The translations under genes and the position numbers were made by a program. DNA of 64,000 nucleotides from Octopus bimaculoides (taxonomy: Eukaryota), in assembly GCF_001194135.2 (NCBI RefSeq), contig NC_068983.1, forward strand, positions 53,775,666 through 53,839,665, in the 5' to 3' direction. The notes beneath the pieces are model-generated. The model did no database searches. It had not been told where the DNA came from and worked only from the letters and a program-made list of their open reading frames with translations. This document shows, one piece after another, positions 2,400 to 51,685 of this stretch. Within the stretch, counting starts at the first letter, position 1. Each line of letters begins with the position of its first letter.

Positions 2400-2880
2400 T
2401 TGATGAAGCACTTGAACAGTTAAAACAGCACAAGAACCGGGCAGCAGATGGAACATTTAACTGTTGATCTAGTATATTCTTCAATTATATATACTTCACG
2501 TTCAAACTGATAATTTTAATGCCCCACAATTGTTTTCATTGCTCTCTGACAAAAGTCAAGACACATACAGTAGATTTTTTGCCAAAATAAATGAATTACT
2601 GCAGAATGAGGGACCTGTTGATATAATTATGGATTTTGAAAAAGCAGCCCATAATGAATTTCTGGGTCGAATTTGGCATGCTGCTTGTTTTATTCAGGAC
2701 CAAATGTGTACAAACATGTTGTGCCAGAAGAACTAAAATGCAGATATCACGAAGATGACAGTTTTAGTCTAAAAATGCAGTGTTTTGTTGCCCTTGTCTT
2801 CCTGCTGGTTGATGATGTTGTAGATGGATAGATGATTTTCCACAGTCAGTTATATCCTATTTTGAAAATAATTATATACC
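2400..2880 (+). pseudogene. Decayed Mutator/MULE transposase fragment
   Basis: ADGTFN...LFSLLSDKSQDTYSRFF...IIMDFEKAAHN...CF..Q...FSLKMQCFVALVFL...YFENNYI, with stops and frameshifts. These are MULE DDE domain motifs. Confidence 0.85.
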
Positions 2881-11564: not shown

Positions 11565-12392
11565 CAAATCTTTTGTCTTACCATCCCTGTTGTATTCCTG
11601 TGAAACTTGGACTTGTTAGGAAGAGCATTTTAAACTGTTAGAACAATTCCACCAAAAATGCCTTCATTGCATTTTTAAAATTAAATGAAGTTCTTTTACT
11701 CCAAACACAGATGTTCTTGCTTCTGCAGGCATCACCTCAATTAAAGCTATGATTTTAAGGAACCAATTGAGAAGGTGTGGCCATATTGTTCGAATGGCAG
11801 ATGAACGCATGCGGAAACAGCTGTTTTATGGTGAGCTTGCAGAGGGGAAACAAATCGACATAAACCTAAAAAATGGTTTAAGGACAGCATAAAGACTACT
11901 ATGAAGTCACTTGGAATGGTTCCAGAAAATATAGAAACCCTTGCTTCGGATCAAGTTGGATGGTAAACAAAGGTGTGAAGTGGAGTGAAAGCATTTGAAG
12001 AGGCCAGGATAATGAAAGTAAGACTCAAAAGAGATCTAAGGAAGAATGTAACGATCGAGAAGGTGAATGACAATGACCTTTTTGAGTGCACAGTCTGTGA
12101 CAGACCATGCCTCTCTTTGGCTGGCCTCAAATCTCATTTGCGAACACTTGGAAAACGAACCTCCACCAACTATTCTGACTATATGTCTGTGCACACCTTT
12201 GGATGCAGTGTATGCCAAAAGGTTTGCAAATCCAACGGAGGCCTCAAAAGACATGTTGAGATCCACAAAGAGCAGAACTTATCTGGAGGTATTGGTGGTC
12301 CAAATCTGAGGTGCAATCTATGCGGGTGTTTTTTCAGAACATTGTTTGGTTGAAAAAGCCACATCAGACGCCATGATGGTGCTAAGGTGTAG
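11565..12392 (+). pseudogene. RTE/BovB-like LINE 3' fragment ending in three C2H2 zinc fingers
   Basis: VLPSLLYSCETWT...LEQFHQKCL...QLRRCGHIVRMADERMRKQLFYGEL (RT thumb and C-terminus). It is followed by CTVCDRPC..SHLRTL, CSVCQKVC..RHVEIH and CNLCGCFF..*KSHIRRH, with several stops. Confidence 0.9.
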
Positions 12393-15027: not shown

Positions 15028-15058
15028 ATAGTCACCAGCTAGTGATGAAAACTCATTC

Positions 15059-16838
15059 CGTGGAGGGCATGCCTGAGAGGGCCACCACAAATTGTAGTGG
15101 TCCCAGTACAGTTCTCTGTGGGACTCCGCTGAGAATTGGTGTCTCTTCAGAGTTAGCACCATTGGCTACAGCTGTCTGACTCCTGCCCTTCAGAAAGTCA
15201 TTCAGCCACTCTCCCAGTTTCCCAGTAATACCAAGGTTTTGCAGCTTGTGACGTATCATGCCATGATCAACCTTGTCAAAGGCTTTGGCAAAGTCGATGT
15301 ATATCACGTCAACAGCTGACTGGTTTAGCTATTGTTTCAGAACCCAGTCAAAGTGCTACAGCATCTGTATAAGGCAGCTTATCCCTGGACAGAAGCCATG
15401 TTGTATGTTTGTGAGAAGTTTGTTTTCTTCTAGGAATGTGATCATCCTTTCTCTTACAATGCGTTCCATTGTCTTGCTAACATGTGAGATCAGAGAGGTG
15501 GGCCTGTAGTTTTTAGCATCTGCTCTGCTCCCTCCTTTATGGAAAGGGCATATTATACCCTCTTTTAGCATGTTGGGAAGTTTACCACATGCAAGGAAAC
15601 TCTGCAAGAGCCTTTTTACAAGTGTTTAAGAGAACAGCCAGGAGTCCATCTGGGCCTGTTGCTGAGTTTAATCTCATCTCATCAATAGCCAATATTACAT
15701 CCTCTTCTGTTATGTTGATGTAATCAATGGTTGCCTATTTTCCAAATAGATTTGTTACATTGAAAAACTCTTCAGGCTTGTTTATTTGCATATTTTCCAG
15801 TGGAGAAGTAAAATCACTTCAGAATTGTTTATTTTGTGCTTCACTTATCTTCCCCAGGTCTGCAGTTAGTGAGCCACTTTTACCAAATAGTGGTCCTATG
15901 TTATAGTGTACTGAGGCAAACTCCTTTGTCAATGTTTAGAAACTTTAGGATTTCTTTTATATTTTTGACTGCCCAGATTTCTCTTTCTTCTCTTCCTTTT
16001 TCATGGGAGATTTTGAGATTATTTTCAATCTCAAAGAGTTCTTCTGTCAGGTGGAAATTCAGTCATTGAGATGTTTGTTTAAACAATTCGAGATCTTTAT
16101 TCTCTGCTGCATGAGTATTCTCCTGTGTCGAGGAATGATGTTTTTGTGTGTATTGGCTCTCTTCTCTGGGACATATTTAATGCATATGGCTCGCATTATT
16201 GACATGAATTTATTGAGTTTCATATCTATGTCTTGCATAGAGAAGCTTTTACGCCAGTCCTGTTGGAGTATCTGTTTTTCCAGTGACTTCCAGTCAGCCT
16301 CACAGAAATTTAGGCTGGATAGGGTTTGAGTGCCATCTGTGCAGAGTTTATCTTCAGTTAATTCCAAGCCATATATTGTCAGTTCTATCATGTTATAGTC
16401 TGAGAATATTGTCTGTGATATATTTACATTGTGGATGATTTCCACATTGTTTGTAAAACAGAAGTCCAGGATATTTTTGTGCCTGGTTGGAGAGAGTATG
16501 ATCTGCTCCATGAATAGCATTTTCATAAGATCAAATAAAGACTCTGCTTGATTTCGCTCTTTGTGTGTCATTCCTAGGGTTATGTTGCCCTCAAGCCACC
16601 TGATGTTGGGGACTTGAAGTCACCCATCAGGAGTATAGTAGTATGTTGATCCAATTGTGTTAGTACTTCCTTTATCGCACTGAGGCTTTCCTCAAATTTT
16701 CCATCATGATTTGAGGCAACAGGTGGGTGATATAGTGTGCATATCACTATATCAAGTTGCTTTAGATGAACTACGAGTGAGTCACACACCAAGTTTGAGT
16801 TTGGAAGCAGGGTTAATGGTGTGACATCTTCGCAGATA
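15059..16838 (-). pseudogene. CR1/L2-group LINE ORF2 fragment (AP endonuclease plus N-terminal RT), truncated at both ends
   Basis: ICTLYHPP..LLMGDF; SPTRHKNILDFCFTN..SDYN; HKGGSRADAKNYRPTSLISHVSK; YIDFAKAFDKVDHG; SGVPQRTVLGPLQF. Frameshifted. Confidence 0.92.
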
Positions 16839-16842
16839 TATA

Positions 16843-18435
16843 TTAGGTGGAGCGAAAAATGCAACTTTCAAAATTGGTAACCAAGAATCGATATTTTGAT
16901 GCAAATTAAGGTTAAAAGAAAGGTGTATAAAGAACTTTGTGGTTAAGTATATTTTTCAGGCTCTGCAATGCAATTTTTCTAAATTGCTATTTTTGGTCGA
17001 ATTTTGGCTTTCATGGATTATAAGTCGTAACGATTAATATTTCTACGTAGCTGAAGGCAAAACATTAAATATATTATCCATAAAAGGTTGCATACCAAGT
17101 TTCAATATAAATGACTAATATCTTGAGGTTCTGCATTGACAACAAAGAGAATGGGAGTGTGAACTTCTCTCCAGTGCCGCTGCAATGGTCGTTGTGTGTG
17201 GACGTATGTCATACATGTGTGAAGTTTTCTGCTTTGCACCTTGACTTTAGGCCATTGTATTAAAATTAACGATCGTGTTAAATTTAGTGTTCTTTACATT
17301 TAGTGATGACTCACAAGCAAATAACGTGTCATGATATTGAATGCCCGGCATTTGGTACTGCATGTGATTTTAGCGAGCGAGTTTTGCCAACTTACAAGGA
17401 CGTACTAAAATGTGTTTTATTTGAATGAGAAAAAGAAAAGAATGTAGTTAAGAAAGATCCTTCAATTAAGCAAATTGTCAAGATTGTAGCAGAAAAGATA
17501 ATTCTTCTTTGGCAAAAGGTATTCTTCCTTTGTGTTACAATTGAGTCAATTAAACCGAAAATCTTAAACCAAGAATTACTAAAATCTGTGAAAAATAGAA
17601 AAAAATGTGCCATCGTTTCAAACAAAGGGTAATGTGTTTAAAAAACAATGCAACAAAAGATTTATTTGACATTTCTTGTTGCAAGTGCAACTCCTTTAAA
17701 AGCTGCAGTTGTAGTGGAGACAAAAATGTAGCAGAGAGAGAAGAAAATTTTTTACAGGATCAACAGACAAATTGAAAAAATGATCATTGGCAGAATAGAT
17801 CAAGCGGTATCTGAAGAGAGCATTAAGAGGTTGATTAGAGAGAATCGGCCAGATTACAGTCACCCTTCTATGTCAGCAAAGGTAAATTTAAGATTTTCAG
17901 TTTAACTGACTCAGTCATAGCACAAGGGATGGATGCCTTTTTCCAAAGAAGAATTATCTTTTCTGCTACAATCTTGACAATTTGTTTAATTTATTTTAAT
18001 ATATGTGTAATCTAGACCTCATGTAACACATATATTTGGAAGCCATCTCATATGCAACACATATATAAAGAAAACAAAGTTGCAAAGTCTATTTATGTCA
18101 CATAATTTCGAAATTTTAAGTATGTTGCGGAGCCTGAAGATATAAATTTTAGAGCTTGAGATTTTAACACGCTTATTTTTCAAAGATTTTGCAAAAGAAA
18201 ATTAATTCGTAATAATGAATGTAAAAATAAAATGAGGAATGGCAAACGAGTTATAAATTGATTTTTTTTTGCTCATTATTCAAAATTTCAAGTTGGCTGC
18301 GGAGCCTGAAGATGTAGATTTAAGAACTTCAGATTTTAACACAATTGTTTTTTTAAGATTTCGCAATAGAAAATAGATTCTTAAAACCATATTTTGAAAA
18401 TCTGTGTAAAATGTACATTTTTTGCTCCACCCTAA
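16843..18435 (+). mobile_element. Internally deleted TIR DNA transposon, tentatively Sola-like
   Basis: TIRs TTAGG(G)TGGAGC(G)AAAAATG and catttttgctccaccctaa, flanked by TATA. The internal remnant at about 17382-17870 reads LPTYKDVLKCVL...LFDISCCKCNSFKSCSCSGDKNVAEREENFLQDQQT..MIIGRID. The superfamily call is from recalled motif similarity only. Confidence 0.6.
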
Positions 18436-23084: not shown

Positions 23085-23650
23085 TAATTCCGCCGGGGTC
23101 GATAAATTAAGTACCAGTTGCATACTGGGTTGATCCAATCGACTGGCCCCCTCCCCAAATATTTCGGTCTTTGTGCCTAGATTAGAAAAGAATATTTAAG
23201 CAGTAAGCTGACAGAAACGTTAGCACACCAGGCCAAATGCTTAGCAGTATTTTTTCTGTCTTTATATTCTGAGTTCAAATTTTGCCGAGGTTGACTTTGC
23301 CTTTCATCCTTTTGGAGTTGATAAATTAAGTACCAGTTGCATACTGAGGTTGATCTTATTGACTGGCCCCCTCCCCCAAAATTTCAGGCCTTGTGCCTAG
23401 AGTAGAAAAGACTATTTCAGACACATAAGATGCAGTGAGCTGCCAGAATCCTTAGCATGCTGGGCAAAATGCAAAGCAGTATTTCACCTATCTTTACATT
23501 TTGAGTTCAAATTGCACTAAAGTTGACTTTGCCCTTCCTCCTTTGGGGGGAGGGGGGGTCATTGATATAAGTACCAGTTAAGCATTGGGATTGATGTAAT
23601 CGACTTCACCCTTCTGCCAAAACTGGTGACCTTGTGCCAAAATTTAGAAT
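23085..23650 (+). mobile_element. Head-to-tail cluster of about three SINE family A copies
   Basis: Repeated core gataaattaagtaccagttgcatact and tail ttgtgcctagagtagaaaag. Confidence 0.8.
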
Positions 23651-25410: not shown

Positions 25411-26237
25411 AAAGACGCAGATACAGTTGCATGGTTACATAGTTATAGGTATGTATGTATGCAAGTATGAATGTATTCATGTATCTGTATGTTTGTATGT
25501 AAGTACATGTGCAAGTATCAATATTTGTATATACGTACGTATAAACAAGTATATTTATGTGTTCGTATGCACACACACACTCACACATATGCATACATAT
25601 TTACTATTCATAATATATAGAAATCACTAGTTAGCTAGCTAGACAGACATATGTGCATGTATATATGTATCATTTGTTCTATTGCATGTGTATGTAATCG
25701 TATATATACATCTTTACGTATTGTGTGTTTTTAATCCAATTCTTACCACATATTCAATCTACATTGGAGGATTATTGTTTTGTTTCACACATCGATTCTT
25801 TTTAAGATTTAACTTTAATTTTGATATTTTTAATTATGCAATACAAAATTTTAAATGCATTTTAACGTTCTTCTTTCATTAATTCAATTACCTAATCAAG
25901 TTAAACCAGTTCCCCCATCTCCACTCCGATGTTTGAATTACAAATCATAAAACTTCTATTTGCCTAAAAATCAAACGAGAGTTAAGTCCCTTGAACCAGG
26001 TTCTATAGTTTGTGGACTTTCAATACTTCGAACATGCAACGGTAATTTCATTTATGTGGTCCTCGCAAATTAACACATTAAACAAGAAAATAAGTATAAT
26101 AGTTTATATATTGTCGTCTATGTACACAACTACGTATGTATGTTCTTCTTGTTATTTTATGTATTTTGTTTATCGTTTTTTATTTTTTTATTTATATTGA
26201 TTCGGCTTCAGTTTTCTGATATTATTATCGTTTTTAC

Positions 26238-26356
26238 GTTTACGGCCATATCACATTGAAAACACCGGTTCTCGTCCGATAACCGAAGTTAAGCAACATC
26301 GAGCCTAGTTAGTACTTAGATGGGTGACCGCTTGGGAAACCTAGGTGCTGTAAACG
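26238..26356 (+). rRNA. Full-length 5S rRNA-like copy, probably retroposed
   Basis: GTTTACGGCCATATCAC...CCGAAGTTAAGCAAC...AGTACTTAGATGGGTGACCG...GCTGTAAAC. Helix I pairs fully (GTTTACGGC/GCTGTAAAC) and boxes A and C are present, but helix II has two mismatches. Confidence 0.9.
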
Positions 26357-26398
26357 TCTTTCTATCCTTTTAGCCCCCTTTGGGCAATAAAGAAATAA
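26238..26398 (+). mobile_element. 5S-headed retroposon (5S plus SINE-A-type tail) with a 13-bp TSD
   Basis: Tail tttagccccctttgggcaataaagaaataa matches the family A tail at 47640-47669. Flanks ttatcgtttttac (26225-26237) and ttgtcatttttac (26399-26411) match at 11/13. Confidence 0.8.
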
Positions 26399-26682
26399 TT
26401 GTCATTTTTACTTTTGTGTTTGTCTTCAAATATAAAGTTAATTCATCCATTCTTATTTATTCTTAAATACCTCATTAGAGAAACGAAATAGTTATTCAGT
26501 AAGAGTCACTTTTCTCCATTGATTATATATATATATATACATATANNNNNNNNNNNNNNNNNNNNNNNNNNNNNNNNNNNNNNNNNNNNNNNNNNNNNNN
26601 NNNNNNNNNNNNNNNNNNNNNNNNNNNNNNNNNNNNNNNNNNNNNNNNNNNNNACACATGCATACATACATGCATGCATATG

Positions 26683-27240
26683 CACAACAGACCTGTTATA
26701 ATGATTTGGGATAGAGAAGAGAACCTGTGCACCCTTGTGGAAATTAGCTGCCCAGTGGATGTTAACATAAAGCTGAAGATCAGTGAAAAAGAGAACGCCA
26801 TGCTGAACTATTGAGAAATTTGCAGTTACTCTATCAAGATTACAAGTTTAGGTTTATACCTGTAATTAATGGGGCCCTGGGATATGTAACACACTGCCTA
26901 AATACCAATCTTGAGAAATTTGGCTTCTCAAAACCAGAAAGGAGAAAGCTAATTCGAAGGCTACAGATCCAATCCATCGCTAGAACTGTAAAAATCTGTA
27001 AAACTTTCCAGAAGTTTATCATTCAAATATGTATGAGTATGTCTAGATATGTAACTATATGCATGAGAATACATACATAAAACATACAAATCTGCACGTA
27101 TATACGTAATACATACATGCATACGTGTGAATCAGTATATACAGACTGCTTACAGTACATTCTGTCTCACCTAGGGATTCGTCTGGGAATCCTTGAGAAC
27201 TGAATGCCTGGAAGGTACATGAAAAACATTTATACATACA
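26683..27240 (+). mobile_element. R4/Dong-like non-LTR retrotransposon 3' end (REL endonuclease)
   Basis: HNRPDLL*WDREENLCTLVEISCPVDVNI...RNLQLLYQDYKFRFIPVINGALG (PD-(D/E)xK), then a 3' UTR. Confidence 0.85.
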
Positions 27241-27579
27241 CATAGATAGATTCAAACGGCAGCTGCACAGAAACTCAAATACAACCAACCATAGTCAACT
27301 AACACAGCATTAATTCCTCATACTAAATATAAAAATATGAAATCCAAATGAACTTAAAAGAAATAAACCTGCACCTGCACGCCCAGTTAGAAAACCTTCC
27401 TGAACCACAAGTCACCCTATGATCACTCTATAATTTCTGCAGTTCCCTTAATGTTTTGTTAATTCAAAATTTCCCTGCCGCGATAAAGCTACTGATCAAT
27501 AAGAAGTACTGAACTGTTAAATTTAACTTATCATAGTTAATACAATATTGAGTTCTGTTTTATATGTACGTATGTGTTA

Positions 27580-27810
27580 TTTCTTTACTATCCACAAGGG
27601 GCTACACACAGAGGGGACAAACAAGGACAGACAAACGGATTAAGTCGATTATACCGACCCCAGTGCGTAACTGGTACTTATTTAATCGACCCCGAAAGGA
27701 TGAAAGGCAAAGTCGACCTCGGCGGAATTTGAACTCAGAACGTAGCGGCAGACGAAATACCGCTAAGCATTTCGCCCGGCGTGCTAACGTTTCTGCCAGC
27801 TCGCCGCCTT
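27580..27810 (-). mobile_element. Young full-length SINE family A
   Basis: Head, core and tail ...tagccccttgtggatagtaaagaaataa, all CpG-rich and intact. Confidence 0.9.
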
Positions 27811-38900: not shown

Positions 38901-40135
38901 CTTAATTTAAGAAATGTACAAACATTGCTAACATCATTTCCTTGCTTCCAACGCCTTGAAATTCAATTGTAAACTCGAAGAGAGAGAGAGAATCCAACTT
39001 CGACGTGGTTTGAACTCAGATCGTAGACTGCTGAAACACTTCGTCTGTAATAAAATGCTCCTAACACAGTTTGTTGCTCGGGTTATTATTTTTCTTACTG
39101 GATATAAAAATACTTTTTCGAGGTGAACGTGATTTGACCTGACCTACATGTTTACTTCTGAAAAGTAATGGGTAAGCGGCCAGTGAGGAGACACAAGGAT
39201 ACTATTTCAGCTTTGTTTCATCTTGGCTAGTATTGTTCTCGAAATATGATTCAATGTGAAAGCAATCCCTTTGACCTTGAAATATATTTGGGTTAAAGTC
39301 TCAAAATGAAGAAATTAGTTTTATTTACTTAAAGATTGAATCACGATTTAATTTCAAGGAAGTAAAGAAAAGAAGAAAAAAGAGGGATTAATCGGCTGAA
39401 GATGGCGGAGTAGGAGTACAGCCCTGAACAAATATCGTATTCAGCCGTACTTTGCAGATATGACTGTGGTGGCGTTGCTGCGGTGAATGGCTAGCGACCC
39501 TCGCTGCGGCAGCCATCCCACCTCGCAGGGCTCATTTCTCAGATAGGCCGTAGTTATCCTTATTTTGTGGAAGAAATTGGTCGTGCGGGTTACGAGAACT
39601 AAAATGTACGTACGGTTTTCATGTTATATTAAATAAATGTATGTTTATATATTGGTTATTTCACACACATTGTTTACATGAAATTATGGGATGTCACTGT
39701 CGTCACTTTCGGTAAATATCGCAATTTACTTTCATTTTTTAGAACAATACACTTTCACTTCTTTACGACGGTTAAATTACATGTTGACGAGGACATTGCC
39801 CGTGGTTCTACTAAGATTTATTACAATAACTTAATTACCGTTTTTATTGTTTCTTATAATTTATTTTGTAAAACAAAATGCTAAAGTCAATTAAAATGAT
39901 TTAATTATTGTTTTACAGTAGATTTTAAGAGCATCTTTCGCACTTGGTGACTAGTCGGATTAAGCAAGCTGACTTAATTGCTGTTTTATAGTAGAATGTT
40001 TAAACATTATTCACACGTTCGATTCTCTGCGGCACTTCCATTTTGTACCAGGGGTCAGCATAAGCAGTGGCGTAACTAAAGTATGTGCCGCCCGGTGTAG
40101 CCCTTGACTTTCCGCTCCCCTTCCCCGGTCCCAAT

Positions 40136-40345
40136 ACTATTTATAGAGGTTTATACAGCAAGCTACAAAGTACTGCTCCCATAAAAGCGTCATCTAGGTC
40201 AGACCGCACCCACCCCACCCTACCCCAGCTACCATGTTTGTCCATCGGAGAGAATCGGTCACCCATCTAAGTACTGACTTGGCACGATGTTGTCTAACTT
40301 CGGTGATGGGACAAGTAATGTTTTCTATGTGATATGGTCATACCG
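40136..40345 (-). mobile_element. SINE3-like element: truncated 5S head (40255-40345) plus unrelated body
   Basis: Minus strand: gtatgaccatatcacatagaaaac...ccatcaccgaagttagacaacatcgtgccaagtcagtacttagatgggtgaccg. It then switches to a non-5S body ending ...ttgctgtataaacctctataaata. Confidence 0.75.
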
Positions 40346-42399
40346 GACATAGGTGACCTTCCATTACGTACCTGTTCGACAAGTCTATTACCCATTCAAA
40401 TATTCGGGTCAGGAGTTCGGTCCAAGGATAATTTCACTCTTCCTCCAAACTTCCTGGATAAGTGGTCAGTTGGGAGTTCTGCCCTTTCTCCTCTGACCAA
40501 GAGATAAAAACAGTTCGTTAATCCACTACCAGGATGTGTACTTTACCTTATTGACCTGGAAAATATTAAAAAACAAAACAAAGTTGACTCAGCGGGATTT
40601 GAACTCAAAACGCAGAAATCCAGCACAAATGTTACAAAGCATACTAACTGATGCTCTAACAATTTCACTAATCCTCTGCCGAGATTGGTACTTTATCCTA
40701 ACGGCTCGGATAATATTAAAAGAAAAAATGAAAGAGTTGACTTCTGCTGCAGGATTTGAACTTAAAATGCCGAAATCCGGAACAAAAACCCTGCAAAGCG
40801 ATAAATCCAATACTCCAACGTCTCAACCAATTCGTCACCTTATGAAATGCTGCAAATTTATTAGGAAGAGAAGACAATGGTCGTATATGTGTATTATTAG
40901 ACAGAAGTGAAACACTAGTCAGTAGGCTAAATTATAGTGTATTAAACGTATGAAGTGCTATTTAAAGGGCGGTTTACAGTAGTTGATGATAAAGGTAGAA
41001 ATTTCATTTTCGTTATCTGTACTGAAATATATGACTATCAAGTGCATCTAAATAAAGGATTTCCACACGGAAGTCGTATTCAAACGAAAAGTAGCCCTGG
41101 TCTAGCATAGTTGTGTGGTTAAGAATCTCGCATTGCAGTCACATGGTCTCGGGTTCAGTCCCACTACATGGTCTTGAGCAATGTTTTCAGCAATAGCCCA
41201 GGCCGATGAATGCCTTGTTAATTGAATTTTTAAAAGGAAACTTAAAGCATATCTATCTATCTGTCTGTGTGTCACTATCGCTTCACAACCGGTGTTGGTT
41301 TGTTTACGCCCTCGTAACTTATCGGTTCAGCAAAAAAGATATCTATAGAATAAGTACCAGGCTTTAAAAAAACACAATCCAGTGACTGAAACAAATAAAA
41401 GAAGACAAACATACAGACAGACATGGGCATTCCTGAAATTCTCCATGTGAGATTCTTAGGAGAATAGATGCACACACTTGGGTGTATGCATCGATTATTC
41501 AACCATCACACCAACTCAACCACAGATTTACAAATTTGCTTAACTCAAAAAATGTTGTTGCTTTGTTAGCAACCGGCTTCAACTCACTCAAGAAGAACTT
41601 ACATTAAACTAAAGAAAAAAAAAAACACGCACATGTAAGATATGTATGAGTATACATATATTTATCGGTCTACTTTGTGCAATGTATTTTTTATTTAAGA
41701 TGGTAGGACGTGGTTTTAGCAAGATTTAACTGTTATTTCTAGCCGCTTGTGTGACTACATAGAGGCATCATTCAGCGGTCACAATTGTTAACGTGTTTGC
41801 TTAAGCATTCTGGTACAAGTGGTAAACGGCACGATTCCCAGCTAGCGAGCTTGGTGAAAGAAAGAAAGAAAGAAAGAAGGACTAATGCAGTCGCAGCCTC
41901 ACTACCGTGTTAAATCCCAGATGAATCATCTTCACGAGTGTTTCAATAATCCATTGAAGTTATTTCAGTTTATGCTTTTCCCGCAGGAAAGATTGCAAAC
42001 TTTACAACTTTGCTGTGTGATGACATTGTCCATATAGGCGCAGGCATGGCTGTGCAGTAAGAAGTTTACTTCCCAAACCGTTTGGTTCAGGGTTCAGTTC
42101 CACTGCAAAGTACTTTGGACAAGTACCTTCTACTACAGCCTCGGGCCGACCAAAGGATAGAGGCCAGGCTAACGTGAACCACCTCTTCCCAGAGCTGGCA
42201 GAAACATTAGCACGCCAGCCGAAATGCTTAGCGGTATTTCGTCTATCTTTACGTTCTGAGTTCAAATTCCGCCGAGGTCGACTTTGTCTTTCATCTTTTC
42301 GGAGTCGATAAATTAAGAATCAGTTGTATTCTGGGGTCGATCTAATCGACTCTCCCTTCCCCAAAATTTCGGGCTTTGTGCCTAGAATAGAAAAGAATA

Positions 42400-43618
42400 C
42401 ACTCAGACATGACAAAAGTAAATAGACACCCTATAAAACATCGTTTTATGCTTATTTTAACTGAAAAAAGTTTGTATTTTTTTATTACTTGATATGTTTA
42501 TGTTTTAGCTCCTGTATGTGACTGTTTAATCATGCCACATACAAAAGAAGGCTTGGGACTGTCCGAATTTCAAAGAGGTCGTATTTGGTGTCAATCTGAA
42601 AGTGGACCTAGTCAGAGTAAAATCGCAGAAACCTTGGGATCCCACTTTCTACAGTTAGTAGAGTGATTGTGCAATTCACCAGGGAGGGCAAGGAGTTCAC
42701 ATTACCTCGACCAGGGCCCTCTGACAGGACCCTTCTCTTTGTTAAGTGAAGTGTGGAGGATAATCTTCGTTGCAAGGCTTCTGATATAGCAGAATAAGTT
42801 GATGTCAATCTCCGAACAGCTAGCTGTCAGGTATCACCGCAAGCTTGGCTACTATATCAGAGCAGTAAGAAGGAAGCCACTTCTTCGACCAGCCAATATC
42901 AAGCAGAGAAAAGATCGGGCCAGTGAGATGGTGGGGAGGCCACAGTCATATTCTCTAATGCGTCCAAATTTGCTGTATTTTCTGACAGTGGTCCAGTGTG
43001 ATCAAGAATTTGACGTGAAAAGATTGCAATTAGCAACGAAACACAGTCTGAGGAGCAATTTGGAGCAATGGTCGATCAGAGCTGGTGGAATGTGAGGGAA
43101 ACATAAACTCAGATAAATATGTGTCCATATTGCAGAAAGGACTCCTTCCGATCTTCTCCAGCGGTGAAATGATTTTAAAGAAGACTCTTTATTTATGAAA
43201 GATGGGGGTCCTTGTCACACGGCTAAAAAGACCCAAGGTTGGCTGGAAGAGAATGGCGTTAAAAAAGTTTCCATAGCGAAGCCAGTCACCAGATATGAAC
43301 CCTATTGGACACCTCTGCGTCATAATGAATAGAACATTTCGAACACTTCATAAAAAGAGCAACAAAGCATATTCAAAGCCAAATCTTTTGAGATTACTGC
43401 ATGAAACTAGGCAAGAAATTCCTCAAGAGAATATTCATCATCTGATCAGTAACGTTCCTAATAGGATCCTTACACTGAAAAATGTAATGGAAGGGCATGT
43501 CTACTAAACGTTAGATATTCACATTATAATAATTAATAAATAATTTGAATGTATGATTTCAGATTTAAATTAATTTTAACGAGTATAAGAGTGTGTATTT
43601 ACTTCTGTCATGTCTGTG
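42400..43618 (+). mobile_element. Complete-length decayed Tc1 transposon
   Basis: TA|CACTCAGACATGACAAAAGTAAATAGACAC...GTGTATTTACTTCTGTCATGTCTGTG|TA. Transposase remnants RKPLL, FSD, DGGPCHTAK and QSPDMNPI, with stops and frameshifts. Confidence 0.9.
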
Positions 43619-47209: not shown

Positions 47210-47670
47210 ACAGTAAGGCGGCGGGCTGGTAAAAACATTAGCACGCTGGGCGAAATGCTTAGTGGTATTTCGTCTGTTTTTACGTTCCGAGTTCATTTTC
47301 CGCCGAGGTCGACTTTGCCTTTCATCCTTTCGGGGTCGATGAATTAAGTACCAGTTGCGTACTGGGGTCGATCTAATCAACTGGCCCCCTCTCCAAAAAT
47401 TTTGGGCCTTGTGCCTAGAGTAGAAAATAATATTTAGGGCGTCGAGCTGGCAGAAACGTTAACACGCCGGGCGAAATGCTTAGCGGCATTTCGTCTGCCG
47501 TTACATTCTCAGTTCAAATTCCGCCGAGGTCGATTTTGCCTTTCACCCTTTCGGAGTTGATAAATTAAGTACCTGTTACGCACTGAGGTCGATGTAATCG
47601 ACTTAATCCCTTTGTCTGTCCTCATTTCTCCCCTCTATGTTTAGCCCCCTGTGGGCAATAAAGAAATAAA
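47210..47670 (+). mobile_element. Two tandem SINE family A copies with different tails
   Basis: The first ends gtgcctagagtagaaaa; the second ends tagccccctgtgggcaataaagaaataa. Confidence 0.88.
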
Positions 47671-48574: not shown

Positions 48575-49140
48575 GGCGGTGAGCTGGCAGAAACGTTAGC
48601 ACACCGGGCGAAATGCTAAGTACCACCGAAGTCGACTTTGCCTTCCATCCTTTCGGGATTGATAAATTAAGTACCAGTTGCGTCCTAAGGTCGATCTAAT
48701 CGACTGGCCCCCTCCCCAAAAATTTCGGGACTTTTACTGAAAGGAGAGAAGAATCGTTAGCATGCCGGGCGAAATGCGTAGTGGTATTTCGTCTGCCGCT
48801 ACGTTCTGAGTTCAACTTCCACCGAGGTCAACTTTGCCTTTCATCCTTTCGGGGTCGATAAATTAAGTACCAGTTGCGTCGATCTAATCAACTGGCCTAA
48901 AAATTTCGGGCCTTGTGCCTCCAGGGCGGCGAGCTGGCAGAGTCGTTAGCACGCCGGGCGAAATGCTTAGTGGTGTTTCGTCAGTCACTACGTTGAGTTC
49001 AAATTCCGCCGAGGTTGACTTTGCCTTTCATCCTTTCAGGGGTCGATGAAATAAGTACCAGTTACACACTGGAGTCGATGTAATCGACCAGCCGCCCCCT
49101 TTCCTCAAAAATTTTCAAGGTCTTGTGCCTAGAGTACAAA
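48575..49140 (+). mobile_element. Head-to-tail cluster of three to four SINE family A copies
   Basis: Repeated gttagcac(a/g)ccgggcgaaatgc head and core. Confidence 0.85.
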
Positions 49141-50719: not shown

Positions 50720-51620
50720 TATTCAGTTTTATTTCAAGATTTCTTACCAATAGAGAAAGAATCAGTTTCTAACCTAGATCCAAGGTTCCTTCATTGGAAT
50801 TTCAACATCAATGTGCAGATTTGTATGTCTTATGTCTATTGTCATGCATTTAGTTGCATATCTAGACATGCTTATTTATATTTAAATGTAAACTTCTGGA
50901 TAGTTTTACAGATATTTTTACAGTTCTAGTGATGGCTTAGATATGTATCCTTCGAATTAGCTTTCTCCTTTCGGGTTTTGAGAAGCCTAATTTCTCAATA
51001 TCGGTATTTAGGCAGTGTGTTACGTATTCCAGGGCCCCAATAATTACAGGTATAAATCTGAACTTGTAATCTGGATAGAGTAACTGCAGATTTCTCGATA
51101 GTTCAGTGTAGGTATTCTTTTTCACTAATCTTCAGCTTTATGCTAACATCCACTGGGCAGCTAATTTCCACAACTGTACAGTTTCTCTTCTCTATCCCAA
51201 ATCATTATATCAGGTCTGTTGTGCTTACATTTTATTGGGGTCTTCATTGGGACATTCCACCAGTACTCCCTTTTATTATGAGTAACTATGGCTTCTGCCA
51301 CGCTATGGGTTCTTATTTCTTTGTTCTTGAGGTTATCCTTCCAACGGATTTCATTATAGAGTGTTCTAGCTACATCATGTCTCTTCGGTAGATAATACCG
51401 TGATGACATTTTCGAACAACTGCTTATGGTGTGGGTAATATCTTCGGTGTTAACTCCGCAAAGTCTGCATCGGTTGTCACATTTTACTGCTTTTCCTGCA
51501 TCTCTGTCCCTTTTGTGCATCAGGTACTTGGTTGATATTTCCTGTTCCTGGATTGCAAACGCATACTCTTCAAAGTGGGAGGTTGTAATCCGGCTATTGG
51601 TCCATGATAGACTGCTTTCA
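50720..51620 (-). mobile_element. R4/Dong-like non-LTR retrotransposon 3' part (CCHC knuckle plus REL endonuclease)
   Basis: CRLCGVNTEDITHTISSC..YYLPKRHDVAR..WWNVP..KHNRPDIMIWDRE..RNLQLLYPDYKFRFIPVIIGALE; ends on a (CATA)n tract. Confidence 0.9.
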
Positions 51621-51685
51621 TGATTAATGTTACTATCACGAGCTATTCTTATAATGTAACGGTTCTAATGGCAATACATCAAAGT

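What the first reader, a model, noticed from the sequence alone, without database searches (positions are those of the whole stretch)
26225..26411. 5S rRNA fused to a tRNA-SINE tail with a 13-bp TSD: a SINE3-type chimera
Seen: a complete 5S-like sequence is followed within about 10 nt by tttagccccc(t)tgggcaataaagaaataa, the 3' end of SINE family A (47640-47669; variant at 27580-27603). The whole is bracketed by an 11/13 direct repeat. Helix I and the CCTAG/CTAGG helix pair fully, while helix II has two mismatches. Known: 5S-derived SINEs (SINE3) borrow LINE tails, and LINE RTs make chimeras by template switching. Inference: either a one-off chimera or a new 5S-headed family using the same LINE partner as family A.
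Basis: partly seen in the sequence, partly recalled or inferred. Interest (0 to 1): 0.75.

Follow-up and report, generated by a model that had tools for sequence, protein, structure and literature searches.

The report
Octopus 5S-headed SINE-type retrocopy
A complete 5S ribosomal RNA copy, fused to the short 3' tail of a neighbouring tRNA-derived SINE, was inserted into an octopus genome as one retroposed unit; elements of this 5S-headed kind are already known, and catalogued in octopus, so it is a clean example, not a surprise.

Summary
Rfam finds a full-length 5S rRNA at 26238-26356 (104 bits, model 1-120), with only two non-standard pairs, both in helix II. Twelve bases later comes a 30-nt block (26369-26398) that matches the 3' end of a tRNA-type SINE at 47640-47669 at 29 of 30 positions and ends at the same last base. 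An 11/13 direct repeat abuts 5S position 1 and the last tail base (chance about 6e-5 to 3e-3). This is one retroposition event of a two-part unit, 5S head plus LINE-type tail: the simplest SINE3 design.

Two indirect facts favour a multi-copy family over a one-off chimera. A second 5S-derived fragment lies 14 kb away and shares the same helix-II variants. A published Octopus vulgaris repeat annotation lists four '5S' SINE families covering 9.8 Mb, roughly one copy per 64 kb.

The design has direct precedents (HaSE1/HaSE3, CoeSINE4/CoeSINE5, zebrafish SINE3). Verdict: real, well defined, new member of a known kind, modest interest.

The parts
26225..26237 (.). Left copy of the target-site duplication (TTATCGTTTTTAC)
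   Evidence: Matches 26399-26411 at 11/13 and ends one base before 5S position 1.
26238..26356 (+). Full-length 5S rRNA-derived head (119 nt). It carries the region that in 5S genes holds the internal Pol III promoter (box A, IE, box C).
   Evidence: Rfam RF00001, 104.1 bits, model 1-120, two non-standard pairs only, both in helix II. 47% GC with 8 CpG retained.
26357..26368 (+). 12-nt linker TCTTTCTATCCT between the 5S 3' end and the tail block. CTAT (26362-26365) may already belong to the tail, matching CTAT at 47635-47638.
   Evidence: Alignment A1, nhmmer and direct reading. There is no A-run and no internal direct repeat, so nothing suggests two separate insertions.
26369..26398 (+). Tail shared with tRNA-SINE subfamily A. 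It contains a GCCC-N5-GGGC hairpin and the terminal AATAAAGAAATAA. Its first bases, with 26368, form a T4 run (26368-26371).
   Evidence: 29/30 to 47640-47669 with 0 expected by chance. All three tail-A copies end at the same terminal base. Hairpin predicted but not significantly stable. T-runs listed.
26399..26411 (.). Right copy of the target-site duplication (TTGTCATTTTTAC). Its T5 run (26405-26409) could terminate a Pol III transcript that reads through the tail.
47436..47669 (+). Reference copy of the tRNA-type SINE carrying tail A (tail module about 47604-47669)
27577..27808 (-). Second tail-A copy of the tRNA-type SINE, 89% identical to 47436-47669, with a diverged tail (TGTAGCCCCTTGTGGATAGTAAAGAAATAA)
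40253..40345 (-). Second 5S-derived fragment (5S positions about 4-96, 83% identical to the first), followed by unrelated sequence and lacking tail A
   Evidence: blastn 83% over 88 nt. nhmmer E 2e-14. Alignments. Not detected by Rfam at E<=1.

Best explanation
This is a 161-bp retroposed unit: a complete sense-strand 5S rRNA sequence joined to the last 30-37 nt of the 3' tail carried by a minority subfamily of the local tRNA-derived SINE. A LINE's target-primed reverse transcription inserted it in one event, leaving a 13-bp target-site duplication.

Shown: the two modules, their shared orientation, the exact ends and the single TSD.

Inferred: reverse transcription started on the tail, which the LINE enzyme recognises. 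The 5S part was joined either by a template switch onto 5S rRNA (when the design first arose) or because the copied RNA was already a 5S-tail SINE transcript made by Pol III from the 5S internal promoter.

I think it most likely that this copy belongs to a multi-copy 5S-headed (SINE3-type, head-plus-tail 'simple') SINE family of octopus, which shares its partner LINE with tRNA-SINE subfamily A. A unique accident is the less likely reading. The stated confidence refers to family membership. That it is a single-event retroposed composite I hold at about 0.9.
For: Composite retrocopy:
- Full-length 5S, model 1-120.
- Tail 29/30 to the SINE tail, ending at the same terminal base as both tail-A SINE copies.
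- An 11/13 TSD abuts 5S position 1 and the last tail base, P about 6e-5 to 3e-3.
- No separate repeats flank either module alone.

Modular tails in this genome:
- Of 14 tRNA-SINE copies in the window, 2 carry tail A; most of the others read through to their 3' ends carry a different tail B.

Family rather than one-off:
- A second 5S-derived fragment lies 14 kb away in the opposite orientation. It shares the unusual helix-II CA/CA variants while 8 other CpGs in the first copy are intact. These variants were therefore in the source sequence and are not private decay.
- The host is an octopus.
- The curated O. vulgaris repeat annotation lists SINE subdivision '5S' with 4 consensus families covering 9,831,953 bp, 0.35% of the genome. 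That predicts about 225 bp per 64-kb window; 254 bp of 5S-derived sequence is seen here.

Precedents for 5S- and tRNA-headed SINE pairs sharing 3' parts: HaSE1/HaSE3 and CoeSINE4/CoeSINE5.
Against: - No second copy of the 5S-tail junction was seen. The window holds only one, and no octopus genome or reads could be searched.
- The second 5S fragment lacks tail A and stops at 5S position about 96, so it may represent a different family.
- Part of the 9.8 Mb labelled '5S' in O. vulgaris could be tandem 5S rDNA. The 'recently active' 5S entry is 7 insertions totalling 42 kb, about 6 kb each.
- A T4 run (26368-26371) lies between head and tail and could stop Pol III before the tail is transcribed, so this particular copy is a poor master.
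- An intact, full-length 5S is also what one-off small-RNA/LINE chimeras look like.
Confidence: 0.55

Rival explanations
1. One-off chimeric retrocopy. During a single retroposition of a tail-A SINE or its partner LINE, the reverse transcriptase copied about 30-40 nt of the tail, switched template onto a mature 5S rRNA and copied it to its 5' end. The product was never transcribed and copied again.
For: The junction occurs once in the window. The 5S part is complete and structurally intact, as in U6/L1-type chimeras. A T4 run at 26368-26371 would hinder transcription through the tail. Retroposed 5S copies are argued to be weakly transcribed because type 1 promoters depend on upstream signals. 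5S/LINE-1 chimeras in primates are independent events that do not propagate.
Against: 5S-derived sequence is dense here, with two pieces in 64 kb. '5S' SINE families cover about 0.35% of the O. vulgaris genome, so a random dispersed 5S-like copy is more likely a family member. The primate 5S/L1 chimeras are mostly truncated and antisense, unlike this full-length sense copy.
Confidence: 0.35
2. Two independent neighbouring insertions: a 5S retropseudogene, and later a severely 5'-truncated tail-A SINE or LINE copy that landed right behind it.
For: Nested and adjacent SINE insertions are common in this window, for example 47217-47430 directly followed by 47436-47669.
Against: The only good direct repeat brackets the composite, not either part. 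No A-run or TSD remnant lies at the internal junction. A 30-40 nt insertion landing within 12 nt of the 5S end, plus a chance 11/13 outer repeat, is improbable.
Confidence: 0.04
3. A DNA-level fragment or orphon of the 5S rDNA array, with the 'tail' being the normal spacer downstream of the 5S gene.
For: The tandem 5S rDNA unit of this species could not be examined, so its spacer sequence is unknown.
Against: There is only one full-length 5S in 64 kb and no tandem unit. The unit starts exactly at 5S position 1 and ends exactly at the terminal base of the SINE tail, with a TSD. Those are the marks of an RNA intermediate. No canonical T-run terminator directly follows position 120.
Confidence: 0.03
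4. Assembly artefact: a false join of a 5S read and a SINE read in a short-read scaffold.
For: The scaffold has many N gaps; one (26546-26653) lies 135 bp downstream.
Against: 5S and the SINE share no sequence that could seed a false join. The unit sits in uninterrupted sequence and is framed by a matching TSD.
Confidence: 0.02

Closest known systems
SINE3 (5S rRNA-derived SINEs; zebrafish SINE3, Kapitonov & Jurka 2003, as cited)
   Same: 5S-derived head carrying the type 1 Pol III promoter region, a 3' end of LINE type, TSDs, short and non-coding.
   Different: No body or central domain here; the head is an essentially intact full-length 5S joined almost directly to 30-37 nt of tail. Copy number is unknown. 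The host is a cephalopod.
HaSE3 / HaSE1 of Helicoverpa armigera (PMC3272025) and CoeSINE5 / CoeSINE4 of coelacanth (PMC5786205)
   Same: A 5S-headed and a tRNA-headed SINE in one genome share their 3' part. This is explained by a template switch from the tRNA-SINE RNA to 5S rRNA and by dependence on one partner LINE.
   Different: HaSE3 shares body and tail with HaSE1, at 94% between the two consensus sequences. Here only the last 30-37 nt are shared. An RTE partner was identified for those families; none was found here.
Chimeric retrogenes made by LINE template switching (U6/L1, 5S/L1; Buzdin et al. 2003 as cited; bioRxiv 10.1101/2025.02.02.635956)
   Same: A small RNA at the 5' side, the 3' end of a retroelement at the 3' side, and one TSD around both.
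   Different: Primate 5S/L1 chimeras are mostly truncated and antisense and end in L1 poly(A). This one is full-length and sense, and it ends in a specific non-poly(A) tail of the kind read by 'stringent' LINEs. Such a tail would leave the product itself mobilisable.
'5S' SINE families in the curated Octopus vulgaris repeat library (Bonar et al. 2026, PMC13282606, Suppl. Table 1)
   Same: Same genus-level host and same class label. The abundance (4 families, 9.8 Mb) fits the density of 5S-derived pieces in this window.
   Different: Only totals are published in the text I could read.

Membership tests
SINE (SINEBase criteria, PMC3531059) / SINE3 class | At least 60% identity to 5S rRNA over at least 60 nt at the 5' end (5S-derived head) | tested here: met
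   Rfam 5S model matched end to end, 104.1 bits against a gathering score of 38.
SINE (SINEBase criteria) / SINE3 class | Short (<1 kb), interspersed not tandem, non-coding | tested here: met
   161 bp between the TSD copies. It is the only gathering-level 5S in 64 kb. All frames are closed.
SINE (SINEBase criteria) / SINE3 class | [quoted passage not shown] | not testable with these tools
Scans of metagenome, genome and viral contigs found no octopus DNA. The protein collection holds almost no octopus contigs. Indirect support only: a second 5S fragment in the window and 9.8 Mb of '5S' SINE in O. vulgaris.
SINE (SINEBase criteria) / SINE3 class | 3' tail shared with a partner LINE | tested here: inconclusive
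   The tail is shared with a tRNA-type SINE (29/30, same terminus). No LINE ending in this tail is present in the window. The LINE fragments that are present (15056-16867, 26680-27077, 51164-51664) do not carry it.
SINE (SINEBase criteria) / SINE3 class | Pol III transcript must run from the head through the tail | tested here: inconclusive
   The 5S promoter region is conserved. However, a T4 run at 26368-26371 lies before the tail core, and a T5 run follows the tail. Transcription was not testable.
Retroposed insertion by target-primed reverse transcription | Target-site duplication abutting both ends; 5' end at RNA position 1; 3' end at the element's canonical terminus | tested here: met
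   11/13 TSD, P about 6e-5 to 3e-3. 5S model position 1 aligns at 26238. The terminal base is the same as in two SINE copies.
Template-switch chimeric retrogene (Buzdin type) | Each junction is unique and the product is not propagated | not testable with these tools
   Needs a genome-wide count of the junction; see the copy-number row above.
Functional 5S rRNA gene / 5S rDNA array | Tandem units with spacer, and a T-run terminator directly after the gene | tested here: not met
   A single full-length copy in 64 kb. GTCTTTC follows position 119 instead of a T4+ run; the first T4 lies 12 nt downstream.

The most novel reading that the evidence does not exclude
The element represents an uncharacterised 'head-plus-tail only' 5S SINE family of octopus: an unmodified 5S rRNA joined almost directly to a 30-37 nt LINE recognition tail that a minority tRNA-SINE subfamily also uses. 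This would be the minimal viable SINE3. Together with the tail-A/tail-B swap in the tRNA SINEs, it would make octopus a natural system for studying how SINE heads and tails are exchanged and how short a tail a LINE will accept.
Probability: 0.45. Interest if true: 0.45.

Novelty: new member of a known kind. Interest (0 to 1): 0.3.

Why it matters
SINEs make up roughly a tenth of octopus genomes, and their expansion is specific to octopuses. Knowing which heads, tails and partner LINEs are in play helps explain that expansion. A 5S head fused directly to a very short tail would define the minimal sequence the partner LINE needs to recognise. It would also add a mollusc to the short list of lineages with 5S-derived SINEs. 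As a single locus, though, it only illustrates a mechanism that is already well documented.

Tried and rejected
No run ids were available, so read laying was not used, and I did not try to get round this.
- Junction scan of JGI metagenome contigs (GGTGCTGTAAAC-N0-30-TTAGCCCCC): two hits, both chance matches in non-5S sequence.
- Scan for the conserved SINE core in GTDB genome contigs and IMG/VR: one unrelated bacterial hit and none, respectively.
- Sampling the octopus genome through protein look-ups: the LINE RT fragment identified the host (XP_014783059.1, Octopus, 71%). The collection holds almost no octopus contigs; the best contig is a 796-bp ENA metagenome scaffold.
- Translating the junction for a protein-level search: rejected, because all frames are closed within about 30 codons and lack start codons.
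- Full-text search for sequence strings of the 5S, tail and SINE: no paper.
- Old 5S rRNA compilations and the octopus genome paper were not held, so the species' true 5S rRNA sequence could not be compared.
- The LINE 3' fragment just downstream (26680-27077) as the partner: rejected, because its 3' region lacks the tail.
- Tail hairpin GCCC-N5-GGGC: predicted, but not more stable than shuffled sequence, so I make no structural claim.

Full report
**What is there**

The sequence at 26225-26411 breaks down as follows:
- TTATCGTTTTTAC (26225-26237), the left direct repeat.
- A 119-nt 5S rRNA sequence (26238-26356).
- 12 nt, TCTTTCTATCCT (26357-26368).
- TTTAGCCCCCTTTGGGCAATAAAGAAATAA (26369-26398).
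- TTGTCATTTTTAC (26399-26411), the right direct repeat.

Rfam's 5S model matches 26238-26356 end to end: model 1-120, 104.1 bits against a gathering score of 38, E 9.5e-22. It is the only gathering-level RNA family hit in the 64 kb. The only pairs flagged as non-standard are two adjacent ones in helix II. Helix I (GUUUAC.../...GUAAAC) and the CCUAG/CUAGG helix are intact. ARAGORN finds no tRNA gene in the window.

**The tail**

- The 30-mer recurs once more within three mismatches, at 47640-47669 with one mismatch. No such match occurred in 100 shuffles.
- That site is the 3' end of a tRNA-type SINE copy at 47436-47669.
- A second copy of the same SINE lies on the minus strand at 27808-27577. 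It is 89% identical and carries a diverged tail.
- In a three-way alignment all three elements end at the same base...AAAGAAATAA, after which the flanks are unrelated.
- Upstream of the 30-nt block the chimera resembles the SINE only weakly. CTAT at 26362-26365 may correspond to CTAT at 47635-47638 with a small indel. The shared tail is therefore 30 nt for certain and at most about 37 nt.
- Of 14 copies of this tRNA-type SINE in the window, only two carry tail A. Most of the others read through to their 3' ends carry a different tail (...GGCCTTGTGCCTAGAGTAGAAAAGAATA), joined at the same point of the body. Tails are exchangeable modules in this genome.

**The direct repeat**

The two 13-mers match at 11/13 and abut 5S position 1 and the last tail base exactly. 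The chance of at least 11/13 at a fixed position is:
- 3e-4 with local base composition;
- 6e-5 among all real local 13-mer pairs;
- 3e-3 across the whole window at the same spacing, a figure inflated by microsatellites.

The repeat finder extends the similarity to 19/24 (26218-26241 versus 26392-26415), overlapping the last 7 nt of the tail and the first 4 nt of the 5S. I treat that extension as AT-rich coincidence or weak target-site similarity and build nothing on it. Neither module alone is flanked by a repeat, and there is no A-run at the internal junction.

**Reading of the anatomy**

Three features are the marks of an RNA intermediate inserted by target-primed reverse transcription in a single event: a unit that starts at RNA position 1 of 5S, ends at the canonical terminus of a SINE/LINE tail, and is framed by one TSD. 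That rules out, with good confidence:
- a piece of a tandem 5S array, since there is no tandem unit and no T-run terminator directly after the gene;
- two independent neighbouring insertions;
- a false assembly join, since the two modules share no sequence and sit in uninterrupted sequence.

The steps beyond this are inferred from established knowledge of 'stringent' LINE/SINE pairs that share a 3' tail (reviewed in the papers read). The LINE enzyme primes on the tail. The 5S part became attached by a template switch onto 5S rRNA, either in this very event or earlier, when a 5S-tail master element arose.

**Host**

A decayed LINE fragment at 15056-15625 (-) has as its best named relative XP_014783059.1, a jockey-like reverse transcriptase of an Octopus species, at 71% identity. 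The window is 37% GC, with many N gaps and microsatellites. The tRNA-type SINE load fits published descriptions of octopus genomes, where SINEs are the leading repeat class.

**One-off or family?**

With no run ids, read laying could not be used.
- A junction scan of JGI metagenome contigs gave two chance hits.
- Scans for the SINE core in GTDB genomes and IMG/VR found no octopus DNA.
- The protein collection contains almost no octopus contigs.
- The junction is closed in all reading frames, so a protein-level search was pointless.

Two indirect observations bear on it.

1. The window holds a second 5S-derived fragment at 40345-40253 (-). It covers 5S positions about 4-96 at 83% identity (nhmmer E 2e-14), is followed by unrelated sequence and has no tail A.
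   - It shares with the first copy the two helix-II changes (CACAU.G / CAACAUCG) that create the two mismatches.
   - The first copy still has 8 CpGs, so these changes are not private CpG decay. They were present in the common source, either the species' own 5S gene or a 5S-derived master.
   - A second, independent 5S-derived piece 14 kb away is unlikely unless such pieces are dense in this genome.
2. A curated repeat annotation of Octopus vulgaris (Bonar et al. 2026, PMC13282606) lists a SINE subdivision '5S' with four consensus families covering 9,831,953 bp.
   - That is 0.35% of the genome, or about 225 bp per 64-kb window.
   - This window contains 254 bp of 5S-derived sequence.
   - Caveats: it is another species, I could not see the consensus sequences, and some of that total may be tandem 5S rDNA. 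The paper's 'recently active' 5S entry is 7 insertions totalling 42 kb.

Against family membership of this particular copy:
- A T4 run at 26368-26371, created by one extra T relative to the SINE tail, could stop Pol III before the tail core.
- An intact full-length 5S is also what one-off small-RNA chimeras look like.

Weighing these, I put family membership at about 0.55 and a one-off chimera at about 0.35.

**Comparison with what is known**

[quoted passage not shown] Closer precedents exist for exactly this situation:
- HaSE3 of Helicoverpa armigera is a 5S head on the body and tail of the tRNA-derived HaSE1. It is explained by a template switch from HaSE1 RNA to 5S rRNA, and both depend on an RTE LINE.
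- Coelacanth CoeSINE5 (5S head) and CoeSINE4 (tRNA head) share their 3' sequences.

One-off chimeras of 5S rRNA with LINE-1 are catalogued in primates, about 10% of chimeric insertions. They are mostly truncated and antisense, and they do not propagate.

SINEBase's working definition requires at least 100 copies and a distinction from RNA pseudogenes. That criterion is the one I could not test. This element differs from the precedents in being minimal: no body, an essentially unmodified 5S, and only 30-37 nt of tail. I found no paper describing a 5S-headed SINE of cephalopods in structural detail. The class label does already appear in the O. vulgaris annotation.

**Verdict**

The element is a real, cleanly bounded, single-event retrocopy of a 5S-plus-tail unit, most likely a member of the 5S-class SINEs of octopus. 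It is a new member of a known kind and of modest interest. A single BLAST of the junction against an octopus assembly would settle the family question.

Noticed in passing
window 40253-40345 (-), context 39900-40700: A second 5S-derived fragment (5S positions about 4-96, 83% identical to the first). It breaks off just after the box C region and continues into unrelated G-rich sequence. A tRNA-like SINE head lies directly upstream on the same strand (about 40575-40700), and a B-box-like motif lies on the opposite strand near 40010-40040. It may be the head of a different 5S-SINE family or part of a nested cluster; its ends could not be defined.
   Followed up: partly
window 47217-47669, 48575-49088, 23206-23613: tRNA-type SINE copies sit head to tail or nested. 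For example, a tail-B copy at 47217-47430 is followed after 5 nt by the tail-A copy at 47436-47669. Of 14 copies in the window, 2 have tail A and most of the others read to their ends have tail B, with the switch at the same point of the body (...TAATCGACT).
   Followed up: partly
window 15056-16867 (-): A decayed, frameshifted LINE fragment with weak endonuclease (Exo_endo_phos_2, below the Pfam cut-off) and reverse transcriptase (RVT_1) matches. Its best named relative is an Octopus jockey-like RT (71%). Its 3' end is not in a form that shows tail A.
   Followed up: partly
window 26680-27077 (+) and 51164-51664 (-): Two fragments that look like the C-terminal part of one LINE family (…DIMIWDREEK… motif; weak zf-RVT match on the second). 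The first lies 280 bp downstream of the 5S element, beyond an N gap, but its 3' region lacks the tail, so it is not the partner.
   Followed up: partly
window 26546-26653: A 108-N assembly gap flanked by (TA)n and (CATA/CATG)n microsatellites lies 135 bp downstream of the element. The window has eight N gaps in all, typical of a short-read scaffold.
   Followed up: no
window 11979-12350 (+): An open frame of 124 codons with C2H2 zinc fingers (Pfam zf-C2H2, zf-C2H2_4), ending near a 10-N gap. It could be an exon of one of the expanded octopus C2H2 genes or part of a transposon.
   Followed up: no
window 42790-43504 (+) and 2473-2733 (+): Weak traces of DNA transposases: a Tc1/mariner-type HTH_Tnp_Tc3_2 match and a MULE domain match, both below the Pfam cut-offs.
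   Followed up: no
window 26218-26241 vs 26392-26415: The direct repeat around the element extends to 19/24 if the last 7 nt of the tail (GAAATAA) are compared with the 7 nt upstream of the left TSD (GATATTA). This may be a hint of target-site preference or just AT-rich chance.
   Followed up: no
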